From: Salpingoeca rosetta
Taxonomy: Eukaryota > Protista > Choanoflagellata
Direction of reading: 5' to 3'
Length of the DNA: 64,000 bases
NCBI GenBank assembly: GCA_033442325.1
Contig: JAWQFM010000020.1
Location: 747,233-811,232, forward strand
In this document: positions 3,372 through 47,701 of the stretch, piece after piece
Layout: each line of letters starts with the position of its first letter
Numbering within the stretch: position 1 is the first letter of the stretch
Translations under genes and position numbers: made by a program
The notes under the pieces: generated by a model
What the model was told of the DNA's origin: nothing
The model's database searches: none
The model's input: only the letters and a program-made list of their open reading frames with translations

Positions 3372-3732
3372 AAGCAAGCAGCCAACAGCAAAGACGAAGA
3401 ACACAGCAGCACAACAGCACACACCATCAACTATCGCTCACCCGACCAGCACCACCCACCTGCCTGCGTGCCCTGAGCACGCCTTGACCTCCAGCGCGCT
3501 CGCTCTCTCGCTCTCTCTCTCTCTCTCAACAGCCCGGGCTTCTTTGTGACAGCACCCTTTTCTCTTTCCTTGTTTGTTGCGTTGGTTCTTTACACAACAC
3601 AACACAACACAACACAACACAACACAACACAACACAACACACACACACACACATTCACATTCATACACCCCACAAGCACACACATAACCCCACCCCCAGA
3701 AGCACACACATAACCCCACCCCCAGACGCAAC

Positions 3733-4448
3733 ATGAGTCAACAACAGCAGCGCATCAACTCCGTGGTCGGCGAGCGGATCGCGGCCGTGGTCGACGACAT
3801 GCTGACGCGCTGTGCGCTGTTGCCGCACCTGTGCTCGGCCTGCGTTGTTCGCGACGACGCAAACGAGAGCGACGCAGAAAACGCACGCCCAGCGTCCAAC
3901 ACATCCGAGTTTGCGTGGGACGGCGCATCGCAGCTGAGCGAGGACACGCTGCAGATGCTGCAGGCACACAGACGAACAGAGAAGACATACGCCGCCGACA
4001 CAGACAACCGCGAGCTCAGCATTGCCGTGGAGGAGTCCACCCGCAAGCTCATGCACCACCTCAGCAAGCGGCCGCACGAGGCGCAGGCGCTGCGGCAGCG
4101 GCCGGTGCACCTGCCGGAATCGTTCAAGACACTCACGCAGCGGCTGCAGCAGCTCCGCGATGTGCTCTACCTCAAACTCACAACCAACGTCGAGGATGAG
4201 CGCAGCCAGCAGGAGAAGGTCAACAAGCTTCGCGCCAACGAGAAGAAGAACATTGCGACCCTCAAGTCGCTGGAGACGAAATTGCGGCAGGCGCAGCGCG
4301 AGCATCACCAGGAGACCGAGCGGAGAGACGCCATCATCGCAGACCTCGAGGTGTGTGTGTGTGTGTGTGTGTGTGTATGCGTGTAAATGTGTGTGTGTGT
4401 GCGTTTGTGTGTGTTTGCGTGTGTGTGTGTGCGTTTGTGTATGTTTGC

Positions 4449-43187: not shown

Positions 43188-43230
<43 letters not shown>

Positions 43231-43429
43231 GTGTGCATGTGTGTGTGATGTGAAATGATGCACGTGTGCTGTGGGCTCCTTCATTGTTCGCTGACTTGCT
43301 TGATTGGAGGAGCGTTTACTGGGCGTGGATGCCGCAATGAGCAAGCTGAACGAGGCCATGCCATGCGCCATGCCATGTCATGTCAAGTGACAGCGCACGA
43401 GCAATGAAGGGGGGGGGGGGTTATGGGTG

Positions 43430-43644
43430 CTAGTCCGCAGAGGGGAGGGCCTGGCGGTATGTCGTTCGCGAGATGGACAGGGTCTTGTGCAGTCGTCGGT
43501 CGGGTACAGCTTCCACAGCACGTGCCTTTCAGTTTGCATGTCGTGCGTGTCCGTGATGGGTACGTGATGTGGTGAGGGCGAGGGCGTGGCCGAGGGTGGG
43601 GACGGCAGGTGTTATCATACACACACACACATACACACACACAG

Positions 43645-43680
<36 letters not shown>

Positions 43681-45792
43681 CAGCGCCCAAACCTGGTGGA
43701 GGAGGGACTTGAGCTTCTGTGCGGCGAGGAGGAGCTTCTTGCGGTGGCCCGGCCGCGAAATGCCAAGGCAGTCCAAGTCATCCTGTGTCAGGTCGCACAC
43801 CACGTCCAAATCGTCGTACCCTTTGGACATGAACATGTCCGCATACGCCTCCAGCCGCAGCGCGCTCAGCCACGCCCGCACCGCCTCTTGCAGTCGCAAC
43901 TGCATATGTGTGTGTGTGGGTGTGTGTGGGTGTGTGTGGGAGCACAAAACATGCACGACAAAGCAACAATACGGCAGAAATACGAGCATGAAGAGCACGC
44001 TCCCTTCATGCAGCCCCCGTGCGCGCTTGCTTGTTTGCTTGTGTGGTCCATCTTACGTTGAGAAATGCGTACTTGACCTGCTGCCTCGGGGTGAGCTGCT
44101 GCTGCTCGTCTTCTTCTTCGTCGTTATCATCATCGGCCTCGCTCTCCGGCTCTGACGGGGTCCCGAAAGGTGTGTTTGAGTGAGTGAGTGAGTGTGTGAG
44201 TGAGTTTGAGTGTAGAGAGGGTGTGTGAGTGTTTGAGTGAGTTTGAGTGTGGAGAGTGTGTTAGTGAGTGAGTGAGTGAGTGAGTGAGTGAGTGAGTGAG
44301 TGAGTGAGTGAGTGAGTGAGTGAGTGAGTGACCATTTTGTTTCATTTGTTCGTTGGTTGTTGTTTTGCTTAAACTGTTTGTTGCTGTAGATCATAGCACA
44401 TACTTACACACGGACAACCAGCACAGCAACTTCGCACCTGTGTCGCCACCGGGAGTTTCTTCGGCGTCGTTGCCTGCAGGGAAGCTCGCCTCACTCAGCG
44501 GCTTATCCTACACACGAAAAACACGCCAACATGCAAAATCAACGGGAGGGAGCAGAGGGTGAAAGGATGCCAAAACACGATCACAAGCATGCACACAACA
44601 TACACACACACACACACACACACCACAAAACCAGACAGAGCATACACGCACCCTGCGTTTGCTGCGCTTGTGTGGATGCGGATCAATGGCACCCAGTGCA
44701 TGTGTGATGTGGTCATGGTGGTCGTGCGCGGTGCGCTTCTCACCCCGACCGCCCTGATCGCCACCAGCTGTTGCTGTTGCTGCTGCATGTGTGTGTCCGT
44801 GTCCGGGTGCGTGCGTGTGTACGGCTGAGGGCGCCTGGTTCCGCGCAGCGCTCGATGACAACACGGCCGCCGCCGCCGACGACGACGACGATGGTGGCGG
44901 CGACGACGACGACGCCACAGTGGCGTCCAGCCCTTCCACAAGGTGGTGCAGGATGGCGTAGTGGGTGCGCCCTTGCACCAGCAGCGTGTGGATCTTGTTG
45001 TCGTCCTGCATCGACACTGTCGGCTCTGTCGGCGGCTTCTTCTGAGGGGTTGTATTGTGTGGCGTTGTATTGTGTGGCGTTGTATTGTGTGGCGTTGTAT
45101 TGTGTGGCGTTGTGTGGTGTGGCGTTGTTGTTGGTGGTGCAATCACGAACAAACACAACTCCAAATGGCCATAAAGCTGTGCCCACAAACGCACACACAC
45201 ACACAACACACACAACACACAACACACACACACACAAATACACACAACACGCACACACGCACACACACACACACGCACCTTTTTCCTGCCGCGCTTCTTG
45301 CCAATGTCGCCCCTGAGCCGCTTCTCGGCAGCGCCACGATCACGACCGGGGCACGCGCACACGCGCGTGTCGATGCTGTCGCAGCCAAGGATGCGGCTGC
45401 TGTGCTCGAGGGAGACAGTGACCTCAAAGGGGCGCCGGTTCAGCCCGCCCGGGCACGACGAGAAGCACAGCAGCTCAATGTAGAACACATGCGTGCCTGC
45501 AGGCAACGACAGCGTGTGAGGAGCAGTGAGAACAACAGCACGTGCCAACGACAACTGCGATGAGGCAAAACGCAGTCATAACGACCAACCCACAACCAAC
45601 AACCAACCAACAACTCACGCCTGGGCACAACCAACCCCAACACACCATTCTGTGCAGCGCATCTGTCAAAGGGGATGCGGATGGAATAGTGGCCCGTGGC
45701 GTCCTTCTCGTACACGGCCTCGGGCATGTCGCACCGTACCAGGTGGTACGCGTGCATGCCATCGGCCCCTGTGCAGAAGTGTGCGCGCGCGC

Positions 45793-45872
<80 letters not shown>

Positions 45873-46197
45873 AATGTGTATCTGTTTGATATTCTAACTT
45901 CCAAAAAGCAAGGATCTACTGACGGTGGGTAACAAGGGTAGTGACCTCCATATCCTAGGTATTATTANNNNNNNNNNNNNNNNNNNNNNNNNNNNNNNNN
46001 NNNNNNNNNNNNNNNNNNNNNNNNNNNNNNNNNNNNNNNNNNNNNNNNNNNNNNNNNNNNNNNNNNNGCATGCACGTGTTTCTCGTTGCACTCTCAATCT
46101 TGTCGCTGGGTGGTTGTACGAGCGCATGTTGGGTTCCTGTCTACTCAAGAGATACACACACACATATGGTGAGTATGGCAAGTGGGTGTGGCAAGCG

Positions 46198-46265
<68 letters not shown>

Positions 46266-47701
46266 CGCACACACAAACACACACAAACACACACACACAC
46301 ACGCACACACACGCGCGCGCGCAGAAGCGTACGTTGCGGAACTCCGGCTGGGTGAAGCGGGTCCTGATGCGCAACCACGTGCCGTTGGGAACACGATCTG
46401 ACGAATGGAACAAGCGCAGGTGGGGGAGGGGTGTGAGTGAGCGGAAATGACGTGGGTGGTGATCAAGACAACAAAACAAAAAGGACGAGCGCCGCATGAT
46501 AAAATGAACGCCACATCAGGCAGGCTACCAAAGTTTCCGCACACACACACACACACCTGAGATGGAGAATCTGAAGGGCACTTTGTGGTTCATTTGCACA
46601 AAGAGGCGTTGTGCTTGTGGCGAGTACTGTGCAGATTGGAAATGCAGAGCAGACAATCAACAACGCGCACACCTTCGCGTAAGAGCAGCATGATGTTTTG
46701 CGAGTGCGTGTTTGTTGTCGTGTTGCACCACACTTTGAATAGCAATTTGTCCCCGTTTGCAGTGGTCACAACAGACCGTGAATGGGGTGGCGCGAGGAAC
46801 GGGTTTGCCGCCGCTATCGTCGATAAACTGAAGCTGGAAGTTGAAGGGCCCAGGATACCTTATTTAGGGGAGGGGGGTAACGGCGGAAGGAACATAGCAG
46901 CAAGGCGGCACAGCAGCAAGGCGGCACAGCAGCAAGACGGTACGCGATCAACCAAGGAAAAAAAGCAATGTGCGCTTGCATGAGTGAGCGAGAGTGCACT
47001 TGGCAAGCCATGCGTGTGTGTGTGTGTGTGTGTGTCTGTGCGGTGTCAGACAGAGAGCGAGAACCAAAAGTGGAAGCGGTGCAAGTGACTGACTTGCTCG
47101 GCGTATGCTCCAGCTCAGCCGACGTAGTTGGTACTGTGGGCCAAAACAAAACAAAGCAAAACACAGGACATGCGCAATGAAACCACAACACCGTCAATCA
47201 AGAAGAGCATGTCTAGCAGCAACAGACAGATGGACCAGAAACACACAGCCGCAATACACAGGTGGGCTTACCGCGTGGAAGCTTCACCCGCCCTTTTCCC
47301 GGCAAGTCAACCTGGCATTCATGCACAGCAGTGTGAGGCGTGCTGAACAACATGCAAACACACGCACAAAGCAGGCGTGCACTCACGCAAGAGCACACAG
47401 CACACACACACACACATATGCAAACACGCACACCACACACATACACAAACACAAAGCACGCACAGCACACGCGCACACGCGCACACGCAGCACGCACCAC
47501 TGGCGTGGGGTCTTCAAAGCCATCGTTGAGCTGCACAGTCTCGATGAGAAAGTCGCAGGTTCGATCCAGCTCCAGCTGATCAAACGGCACGTCAAACGAG
47601 CTGATGCCGATCGTAGACGCCTCGCGGGTGCTCAACAGGTCCTCAATGTCAACCTTGATGTCCCTTCCAAGGCTGTCTTCTCTCCTTGCGCCAGCCTGCA
47701 T
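43430..47701 (-). CDS. p53-family transcription factor with p63/p73-type architecture (acidic N-terminus, DNA-binding domain, oligomerisation domain, SAM)
   Basis: DBD exons YPGPFNFQLQF, YSPQAQRLFVQMNHKVPF, HLVRCD and CFSSCPGGLNRRPF..TRVCACPGRDR (45279-45496). OD DDNKIHTLLVQGRTHYAILHHLVEGLD (~44925-45005). SAM VRAWLSALRLEAYADMFMSKGYDDLD..DLDCLGISRPGHRKKLL (43693-43899). One intron contains the N gap. Confidence 0.95.
45049..45128. repeat. 15-bp tandem repeat (gttgtattgtgtggc) x ~5 in an intron of the p63-like gene
   Basis: Directly visible. Confidence 0.9.
45968..46067. other. Assembly gap (100 N)
   Basis: Run of N. Confidence 1.

What the first reader, a model, noticed from the sequence alone, without database searches (positions are those of the whole stretch)
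43430..43525. Post-SAM terminal exon resembles the p63/p73 transactivation-inhibitory (TI) motif
Seen: an exon absent from the ORF track (acceptor ctgaaag, phase 0 after the SAM exon) encodes ARAVEAVPDRRLHKTLSISRTTYRQALPSAD*. ISRTTYRQAL aligns with the p63alpha TI core AVRFTLRQTI (R-x-T-x-R-Q-x-hydrophobic; recalled from memory). Established: in TAp63alpha this strand locks the protein as an inactive dimer until DNA-damage phosphorylation in oocytes. Inference: the full TA-DBD-OD-SAM-TI autoinhibitory design may predate animals. The key Phe is Thr here, so it could also be a degenerate or ancestral state.
Basis: partly seen in the sequence, partly recalled or inferred. Interest (0 to 1): 0.7.

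Follow-up and report, generated by a model that had tools for sequence, protein, structure and literature searches.

The report
Choanoflagellate p63-like inhibitory tail exon
The last exon of a Salpingoeca rosetta p53/p63-like gene is real and expressed, and it encodes a short tail that lines up with the "off-switch" strand of animal p63, which suggests that this self-inhibiting design is older than animals, although its function here is untested.

Summary
Window 43525-43430 (minus strand) is the terminal coding exon of an S. rosetta p53-family gene. Two transcript contigs from two studies join it to the SAM exon at the predicted GT..AG intron, and raw RNA reads cover it as deeply as the SAM exon. 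NCBI already annotates the exon, in PTSG_07599.

- **Alignment:** unsupervised alignments of 140 family members place the tail core in the columns of the p63 inhibitory core, R604-F613.
- **N-terminal partner:** a conserved N-terminal block falls in the columns of p63's partner strand, I50-M59. The acidic pair and the basic pair are both kept.
- **Statistics in relatives:** an animal-only profile finds the motif in the post-SAM tails of Barroeca, S. infusionum, Capsaspora and Syssomonas (p from 3e-3 to 5e-5).
- **Statistics in S. rosetta:** its own copy is degenerate (p about 0.05-0.08, and two registers tie).
- **Structure:** AlphaFold2 gives a choanoflagellate orthologue the same N-terminal plus C-terminal strand pattern as a TAp63alpha control, at lower confidence.

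Autoinhibition itself is inferred, not shown. I found no paper describing this motif in unicellular holozoans. The Thr at the key Phe position looks derived in choanoflagellates rather than ancestral.

The parts
43430..43525 (-). Terminal coding exon: 31 codons plus TAG, the post-SAM tail of the p53-family protein (C-terminus of PTSG_07599).
   Evidence: Translation. Spliced transcript contigs and read depth. Identical C-terminus of P0001.
43439..43474 (-). TI-like core, 12 residues (P0001 338-349). Arg340 and Arg344 sit at the p63 R604 and R608 positions, Thr at F605, Tyr at L607.
   Evidence: It shares columns with p63 A602-F613 in the 140-sequence MAFFT alignments A3 and A4. Orthologue conservation.
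43475..43498 (-). Basic Ser/Thr-rich stretch just before the core (P0001 330-337). It offers an alternative register for the TI match and candidate phosphorylation sites.
   Evidence: PSSM register comparison. Conserved [RK]-x-[ST]-hydrophobic-[ST]-hydrophobic pattern in the choanoflagellate tails.
43300..43429 (-). 3' UTR.
   Evidence: Transcript contigs end at 43300 and 43309, and RNA depth tapers here.
43526..43692 (-). Last intron: 167 nt, GT..AG, rich in (TG)n. RNA depth is about 2 against about 30 on the exons.
43693..43899 (-). SAM-domain exon.
   Evidence: Pfam SAM_1, E = 1.3e-18. Exon limits come from the transcript contigs.
44057..44151 (-). Acidic linker exon before the SAM domain.
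   Evidence: Transcript contigs and the loose-end consensus. It matches P0001.
44928..45044 (-). Oligomerisation-domain part of the OD exon.
   Evidence: Weak Pfam P53_tetramer hit. tblastn to Barroeca P0002 338-376.
45279..45497 (-). C-terminal exon of the DNA-binding domain.
   Evidence: Pfam P53, E = 3.7e-16. tblastn at 79% identity to P0002.
45967..46067 (.). Assembly gap (run of N) inside the gene. It hides a DBD exon and splits the annotation into PTSG_07598 and PTSG_07599.
   Evidence: Sequence. The two NCBI proteins P0239 and P0001 are colinear with single orthologue proteins.
47498..47701 (-). First coding exon: the acidic N-terminal region (start of PTSG_07598).
   Evidence: 100% match to P0239. 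tblastn to P0002 1-50.
47528..47557 (-). TA2B-like amphipathic acidic strand, 10 residues (P0239 49-58). This is the candidate partner of the tail core. Asp50 and Glu54 sit at the p63 E51 and D55 positions.
   Evidence: Barroeca's near-identical block shares columns with p63 I50-M59 in A3 and A4; S. rosetta's own N-terminal half (P0239) is not in those alignments. This block is the best window of an animal-only PSSM on P0239. The orthologous block is predicted as a strand.

Best explanation
The exon encodes the choanoflagellate version of the transactivation-inhibitory (TI) strand of p63-type proteins. The gene (PTSG_07598 plus PTSG_07599, one gene split by an assembly gap) encodes an acidic N-terminus, a p53 DNA-binding domain, an oligomerisation helix, a SAM domain and this 31-residue tail.

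Most likely mechanism (inferred): the tail core forms a beta-strand that pairs with the conserved N-terminal acidic strand. The Arg340/Arg344 pair would face the Asp50/Glu54 pair. The resulting small sheet would pack on the oligomerisation domain, holding the protein in a closed, less active state until the adjacent Ser/Thr-rich stretch is phosphorylated.

Shown: the exon is expressed; the motif is conserved and sits in the equivalent position; both strands align to their p63 counterparts.

Inferred: the pairing, the inhibition and the release.
For: - **Expression and annotation:**
- **Domain order** DBD-OD-SAM-tail.
- **Conservation in choanoflagellates:**
- **Wider occurrence:** most of the 39 SAM-bearing family members detected carry an Arg-x-Thr-hydrophobic-[RK] strand-like motif in the post-SAM tail.
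- **Animal-only PSSM on tails against 20,000 shuffles:** Barroeca p = 6.5e-4 to 3e-3, S. infusionum 7e-4, Capsaspora 5e-5 to 1.5e-4, Syssomonas 5e-5 to 1e-4.
- **Alignment:** A3 and A4 place both the tail core and the N-terminal block in the p63 TID and TA2B columns, with both charge pairs kept.
- **N-terminal profile:** an animal-only TA2B PSSM picks the conserved block as its best window in 8 of 15 unicellular proteins.
- **AlphaFold2 with one sequence set (aligned separately as A3 and A4):** S. infusionum has strands at 42-49 and 533-540 (pLDDT 50-67). The TAp63alpha control has strands at 86-98 and 624-636 (pLDDT 67-78).
- **Literature:** the p63 residues and the charge-swap logic come from PMC4876613, and the core definition from PMC3032508. 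Deleting the equivalent tail of Nematostella nvp63 raises activity (PMC1964547).
Against: - S. rosetta's own core is degenerate: Ser, Thr and Tyr stand where p63 has the hydrophobic face V603/F605/L607.
- A choanoflagellate-only HMM does not recover the animal TI core.
- Four of the seven choanoflagellate tails show no significant match.
- The N-terminal strand scores are individually borderline (p about 0.06 in S. rosetta).
- The AlphaFold2 models gave no coordinates, so the pairing was not seen. Confidence is moderate, and the model is of an orthologue, not of S. rosetta.
- The choanoflagellate OD lacks the second helix (PMC4155161; no helix after 312-328), so a dimer-to-tetramer switch may not exist here.
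- p73alpha keeps a similar motif yet is not closed (PMC9091270), so the motif alone does not prove inhibition.
Confidence: 0.5

Rival explanations
1. The tail is truly homologous to the TI strand but has a different job in unicellular holozoans. It could be a beta-augmentation docking site for another protein, a stability or degradation signal, or a phospho-regulated element. On this view the closed-dimer lock is a later animal (or vertebrate p63) specialisation.
For: - The hydrophobic face that p63 needs is mostly polar in S. rosetta.
- The OD lacks the second helix.
- p73alpha keeps the motif without forming a closed dimer.
- The tail is rich in basic and Ser/Thr residues.
Against: - The N-terminal partner strand and its acidic pair are co-conserved with the tail motif across Holozoa. 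This holds even in corals and a sponge that have lost SAM.
- AlphaFold2 gives the same N-terminal plus C-terminal strand pattern as in p63.
- The cnidarian tail is inhibitory.
Confidence: 0.3
2. The resemblance is chance or convergence. The choanoflagellate tail would then be a lineage-specific basic Ser/Thr-rich C-terminus, for example a kinase target or a nuclear-localisation-like patch, unrelated to TI.
For: - S. rosetta's own match is not significant, and two registers tie.
- A choanoflagellate-only HMM fails on animals.
- Hartaetosiga, S. punica and two Logan proteins show no significant match.
Against:
- The motif occupies the same position after SAM in nearly all family members.
- Syssomonas and Capsaspora bridge the two motif types.
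- Unsupervised alignment places them in one column block.
Confidence: 0.15
3. The exon is a rare or artefactual splice form, and the main protein ends by read-through into the intron.
For: Low read depth (about 2) inside the intron. Read-through would stop after 15 intron-encoded codons (ORF 43645-43998).
Against: Exon depth equals SAM-exon depth. Two independent transcript contigs carry the junction. The orthologues, known from transcriptomes, end with the same motif.
Confidence: 0.02

Closest known systems
Transactivation-inhibitory domain (TID) of vertebrate TAp63alpha, core R604-F613
   Same: - It lies after the SAM domain near the C-terminus.
- Arg sits at the 604 and 608 positions, Thr at 606, Gln at 609, and a hydrophobic residue at 611.
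- An N-terminal amphipathic strand with an acidic pair at i and i+4 aligns to TA2B.
- AlphaFold2 predicts a strand in the orthologue.
   Different: - Phe605 is Thr, Val603 is Ser and Leu607 is Tyr.
- The tail is only 31 residues. It lacks the upstream ASTVS-type phosphorylation cluster, the PPR flank and the C-terminal sumoylation site.
- The OD has no second helix.
- No functional data exist.
TID of Nematostella nvp63 and the coral p63-like proteins
   Same: A non-bilaterian precedent for an ancient TI strand. Deleting the last 34 residues of nvp63 raises transactivation. The corals keep both the N-terminal and the C-terminal strand.
   Different: The cnidarian core is almost identical to the vertebrate one and has lost the SAM domain. 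S. rosetta keeps SAM but has a degenerate core.
Post-SAM motifs of Capsaspora CAOG_00511, Syssomonas (Colp12) and Chromosphaera (Nk52_evm78s1737)
   Same: These are unicellular holozoan p53-family proteins with SAM followed by a short tail that carries the motif.
   Different: Their cores are closer to the animal consensus, with a hydrophobic residue or Cys at the 605 position (p down to 5e-5). No clear N-terminal strand was found in Capsaspora.
p73alpha C-terminal motif (P0137)
   Same: A homologous post-SAM strand motif in the same alignment columns.
   Different: p73alpha is constitutively tetrameric because its N-terminal strands became a second activation domain (PMC9091270). This shows that the motif alone does not guarantee autoinhibition.

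Membership tests
p53/p63/p73 family, p63-like architecture | p53 DNA-binding domain followed by an oligomerisation domain and a SAM domain in one protein | tested here: met
   Pfam P53 at 3.7e-16, a weak P53_tetramer hit and SAM_1 at 1.3e-18. P0001 and P0239 are colinear with single 520-571 aa orthologues.
p63-type TI domain | Short conserved element C-terminal to SAM, at or near the protein's end | tested here: met
   The core starts 18 residues after the SAM exon and ends 2 residues before the stop.
p63-type TI domain | Core motif RFTLRQTISF-like: basic residues at 604 and 608 on one face, hydrophobic residues at 603, 605 and 607 on the other (PMC3032508, PMC4876613) | tested here: inconclusive
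   The basic pair, Thr606, Gln609 and a hydrophobic 611 are kept. Positions 603, 605 and 607 are Ser, Thr and Tyr.
p63-type TI domain | Similarity of the S. rosetta tail to an animal-only TI profile beyond chance | tested here: not met
   p = 0.02 (sharp profile; the best window is not the core) and 0.05-0.08 (softer profiles; two registers at 6.4 and 7.1 bits).
p63-type TI domain | Similarity of the orthologous tails in relatives and in other unicellular holozoans to an animal-only TI profile | tested here: met
   Barroeca 6.5e-4 to 3e-3; S. infusionum 7e-4; Capsaspora 5e-5 to 1.5e-4; Syssomonas and P0112 5e-5 to 1e-4. Eight of 17 tails fall below 0.01.
p63-type TI domain | N-terminal partner strand (TA2B) with hydrophobic and acidic faces | tested here: inconclusive
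   The block aligns to p63 I50-M59 with Asp and Glu at the 51 and 55 positions. It is the best PSSM window, but p = 0.056 in S. rosetta. Significance is reached only in the Syssomonas group and Chromosphaera.
p63-type TI domain | The core adopts a beta-strand in a sheet with the N-terminal strands | tested here: inconclusive
   AlphaFold2 on orthologue P0003 gives strands at 42-49 and 533-540 with pLDDT 50-67, the same pattern as the TAp63alpha control. No contacts were available, and the complex prediction gave no answer.
p63-type TI domain | Deleting or mutating the core opens a closed dimer and raises transactivation | not testable with these tools
   This needs SEC-MALS or AUC and reporter assays.
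p63-type TI domain | Upstream CHK2/CK1 phosphorylation cluster that releases the lock | tested here: not met
   The bilaterian N-A-S-T-V-S block seen in A3 is absent from the choanoflagellate tails. Only a short [RK]-x-[ST]-hydrophobic-[ST] stretch precedes the core.

The most novel reading that the evidence does not exclude
The whole spring-loaded autoinhibition module of TAp63alpha already worked in the unicellular ancestor of animals and their holozoan relatives. The module is an N-terminal acidic strand plus a C-terminal basic TI strand forming a sheet over the oligomerisation domain. On this reading it arose before any germ line or multicellular tissue existed, and S. rosetta, which is genetically tractable, still uses it.
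Probability: 0.35. Interest if true: 0.8.

Novelty: new member of a known kind. Interest (0 to 1): 0.62.

Why it matters
A 2022 review of p63/p73 structure lists as an open question whether TAp63alpha-type autoinhibition is conserved in invertebrate p53 homologues that guard germ cells (PMC9091270). Published notes of a conserved TI strand reach cnidarians (PMC1964547), molluscs (PMC3032508) and an annelid (PMC8901663). The survey of unicellular holozoan homologues mentions no TI and reports no TAD homology (PMC6981761).

If both strands of the lock are present in choanoflagellates, Syssomonas and Chromosphaera, the regulatory design predates animals. (Capsaspora has the tail motif, but no N-terminal strand was found there.) It then becomes testable in S. 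rosetta, where genome editing and a sexual cycle exist. The work also corrects the gene count: two of the three reported S. rosetta 'paralogues' are halves of this one gene.

Tried and rejected
- **Complex prediction.** Six chains from S. rosetta were submitted: the N-terminal exon, the OD and the tail, two copies each. The verdict was 'no answer', score 0.00. This is evidence neither for nor against binding.
- **Whole-protein scan with a sharp animal-only HMM.** The best hit lay in the tail in 7 of 18 unicellular proteins. In S. rosetta the best hit was elsewhere and not significant.
- **Choanoflagellate-only HMM against animal proteins.** No significant recovery of the TI core.
- **Free expectation-maximisation search for the N-terminal block.** It drifted to an unrelated Pro/Ser-rich motif and was discarded. 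A 19-sequence MAFFT of animal N-termini put the bilaterian invertebrates two residues out of register. The 140-sequence alignments gave the coherent register that I used.
- **The second S. rosetta paralogue (contig C11).** Its SAM domain is split over two exons, and the sequence downstream runs into an assembly gap, so its C-terminus could not be read.
- **Alternative register.** The window ending ...LHKTLSI aligns to the second half of the TI core. It ties in S. rosetta but loses clearly in Barroeca and S. infusionum. I keep it as a caveat.
- **Intron read-through as the main isoform.** Rejected by read depth.
- **Joined gene model.** Exons were searched by reference, and the database's own proteins (P0001, P0239) were used instead.
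- **Read laying.** Read laying skipped simple repeats at 43200-43249, 43611-43688 and 43896-43946.

Full report
**What is there.** The exon before it (43693-43899) is a SAM domain (Pfam SAM_1, E = 1.3e-18). Further upstream on the same strand lie a p53 DNA-binding domain (E = 3.7e-16) and a weak tetramerisation-motif hit. The SAM exon ends on a codon boundary at 43693. The intron 43692-43526 (167 nt, rich in TG repeats) begins GT and ends at the first AG downstream. In that frame only a 28-codon ORF exists, which explains why a mechanical ORF list misses the exon.

**Is the exon used?** Yes.
- Transcript contigs of two runs from two different studies (2014 and 2015 nt) join 43524/5 directly to 43692/3. 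One base is ambiguous, and GT..AG fixes the junction at 43525|43693. The contigs continue through the SAM exon to the next two exons.
- Raw stranded RNA reads give depth 21-34 on the terminal exon, 20-35 on the SAM exon and about 2 in the intron.
- Transcripts end near 43300.

**Whose gene is it?** The organism is Salpingoeca rosetta. NCBI protein PTSG_07599 (P0001, 351 aa) already ends with exactly this peptide, so the exon is annotated. PTSG_07599 is truncated at its N-terminus. The neighbouring PTSG_07598 (P0239, 170 aa) starts at the ATG at 47701 and carries the N-terminal region and the first part of the DNA-binding domain. The two proteins flank the run of N at 45967-46067 and are colinear with single 520-571 aa proteins of other choanoflagellates. 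The 2014-nt transcript is also long enough to span both. I read them as one gene. The literature counts them as separate paralogues (PMC6981761).

**Conservation of the tail.**
- *Choanoflagellates:* the orthologues are from Barroeca monosierra, Salpingoeca infusionum, Hartaetosiga balthica and S. punica (names), plus two unnamed Logan proteins. All end 24-53 residues after SAM with an aligned motif built round one invariant Arg. Barroeca and S. infusionum have R-T-T-F-R-Q where S. rosetta has R-T-T-Y-R-Q.
- *Whole family:* a profile search of 1.8 billion representative proteins returned the wider family. Most of the 39 SAM-bearing members detected carry a strand-like Arg-x-Thr-hydrophobic-[Arg/Lys] motif in the post-SAM tail.
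  - Animals: vertebrate p63 and p73, Saccoglossus, Owenia and Trichoplax.
  - Unicellular holozoans: Capsaspora CAOG_00511, Syssomonas and Chromosphaera.
  - Corals and a sponge keep the motif although they have lost SAM.

**What the p63 motif is.** The source is the literature, not memory.
- Straub et al. define the TI core as R604-F613, RFTLRQTISF (PMC3032508).
- Coutandin et al. show that V603/F605/L607 form a hydrophobic face. R604/R608 form a basic face that pairs with E51/D55 of the N-terminal TA2B strand (I50/I52/M54). The sheet is proposed to cover the tetramerisation interface (PMC4876613).

**Alignment.** The positions compare as follows.

| p63 position | S. rosetta residue | Verdict |
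|---|---|---|
| R604 | Arg | kept |
| T606 | Thr | kept |
| R608 | Arg | kept |
| Q609 | Gln | kept |
| I611 | Leu | kept as hydrophobic |
| V603 | Ser | changed |
| F605 | Thr | changed |
| L607 | Tyr | changed |

**Statistics.** I built profiles from animal sequences only and scored the post-SAM tails of unicellular proteins against 20,000 shuffles of each tail.

| Protein | Tail-level p |
|---|---|
| Barroeca | 6.5e-4 to 3e-3 |
| S. infusionum | 7e-4 |
| Capsaspora | 5e-5 to 1.5e-4 |
| Syssomonas and a relative | 5e-5 to 1e-4 |
| Two further unnamed proteins | 1e-3 to 7e-3 |
| S. rosetta | 0.02-0.08 |

Under the sharp profile the best window is also the upstream one.
- Four other choanoflagellate tails are not significant.
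- A choanoflagellate-only HMM does not find the animal core.
- The S. rosetta copy is therefore a degenerate member. Its assignment rests on orthology with Barroeca and S. infusionum, on position, and on the bridging sequences.
- The pre-animal age of the motif rests mainly on Capsaspora and Syssomonas.
- At the F605 position animals have Phe or Tyr, Chromosphaera Phe, Capsaspora Met and Syssomonas Cys. Choanoflagellates have Thr, Lys, His or Arg. The polar residue thus looks derived, with the aromatic moved to the 607 position.

**The partner strand.**
- The unicellular proteins share a conserved N-terminal block. In S. rosetta it is P0239 49-58, window 47557-47528.
- In A3 and A4 this block falls in the columns of p63 I50-M59, with Asp and Glu at the E51 and D55 positions. 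S. rosetta's own N-terminal half is not in those alignments; its block is placed through the near-identical Barroeca block.
- An animal-only PSSM picks this block, in this register, as its best window in 8 of 15 unicellular N-termini. The p values are 0.056 for S. rosetta, 0.006 and 5e-4 for the Syssomonas group, and 0.023 for Chromosphaera.
- The individual scores are borderline, and the register came from an alignment that included the unicellular sequences.
- Capsaspora shows no clear block.

**Structure prediction.**
- With the same 140 sequences, AlphaFold2 gives S. infusionum P0003 strands at 42-49 (the N-terminal block), 56-60, 64-68 and 533-540 (the tail core). pLDDT is about 50-67.
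- A fish TAp63alpha control gives a TA1 helix, then strands at 71-75, 86-98 (TA2B) and 624-636 (TID), with pLDDT 67-78.
- The patterns match, but no coordinates were available, so the pairing is inferred.
- A six-chain complex prediction with S. rosetta pieces gave no answer and is not used as evidence.

**Mechanism.**
- *Shown:* an expressed terminal exon; a conserved post-SAM motif aligned to the TI core; a conserved N-terminal acidic strand aligned to TA2B; both charge pairs retained.
- *Inferred:* the two strands pair and pack on the oligomerisation domain, lowering activity until phosphorylation of the adjacent basic Ser/Thr stretch.
- *Cautions:* the hydrophobic face is weak in S. rosetta. 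The choanoflagellate OD lacks the second helix (PMC4155161). p73alpha shows that the motif alone does not make a closed dimer (PMC9091270).

**Novelty.** TI conservation has been reported for Nematostella, with functional data, for Mytilus, and for both strands in Capitella (PMC8901663). Searches of the held literature found no description for choanoflagellates or other unicellular holozoans. The survey of those homologues mentions no TI and reports no TAD homology. I class this as a new member of a known kind, in a lineage where it bears on an open question.

**Method note.** Exons were searched by reference, and the database's own proteins were used for full-length work.

Noticed in passing
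window 45967-46067 and the genes on either side (43430-47701, minus strand): NCBI models PTSG_07598 (170 aa) and PTSG_07599 (351 aa) are the two halves of one p53-family gene, split by a 101-N assembly gap. PTSG_07599 starts with a spurious short N-terminus. A published survey counts them as separate paralogues, so S. rosetta has two p53-family genes, not three.
   Followed up: yes
window 43475-43498 (minus strand); the same position in the orthologues: Just before the core, choanoflagellate tails share a basic [R/K]-x-[S/T]-hydrophobic-[S/T]-hydrophobic stretch. In several it fits hydrophobic-x-[R/K]-x-x-S, the pattern I recall for checkpoint kinases. It could be the release site, and it is also the alternative register for the TI match.
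   Followed up: partly
window 47620-47701 (minus strand), P0239 residues 1-30: Choanoflagellate N-termini share an acidic-hydrophobic motif of the form hydrophobic-x-hydrophobic-[E/D]-[E/D]-L-L ahead of the strand block. It might be the TA1 activation helix that Pfam-based surveys reported as absent.
   Followed up: no
L005 (G000:C11:906500-915500), about 3650-4430 minus strand: The second S. rosetta p53-family gene has its SAM domain split over two exons. The sequence downstream then runs into an assembly gap, so whether it has a TI-like tail is unknown.
   Followed up: partly
alignment A3, columns before the TI core: Bilaterian invertebrate p63-like proteins share the N-A-S-T-V/I-S block that corresponds to the p63 CK1/CHK2 phosphorylation cluster. 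It is absent from unicellular holozoans and corals, so the phospho-release module may be younger than the lock itself.
   Followed up: no
proteins P0007, P0009, P0011, P0012, P0031 (corals) and P0034 (sponge Corticium): These proteins have lost the SAM domain but keep both the N-terminal strand and the TI core. This fits the published finding that SAM is dispensable for the closed state and suggests the two strands are retained as a pair.
   Followed up: partly
window 43526-43692 and most introns of the gene: The introns are packed with (TG)n/(CA)n and (CACT)n microsatellites. Low-level retention of the last intron would end the protein 15 codons after SAM, giving a TI-less form. The depth of about 2 against 30 may simply be pre-mRNA.
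   Followed up: no
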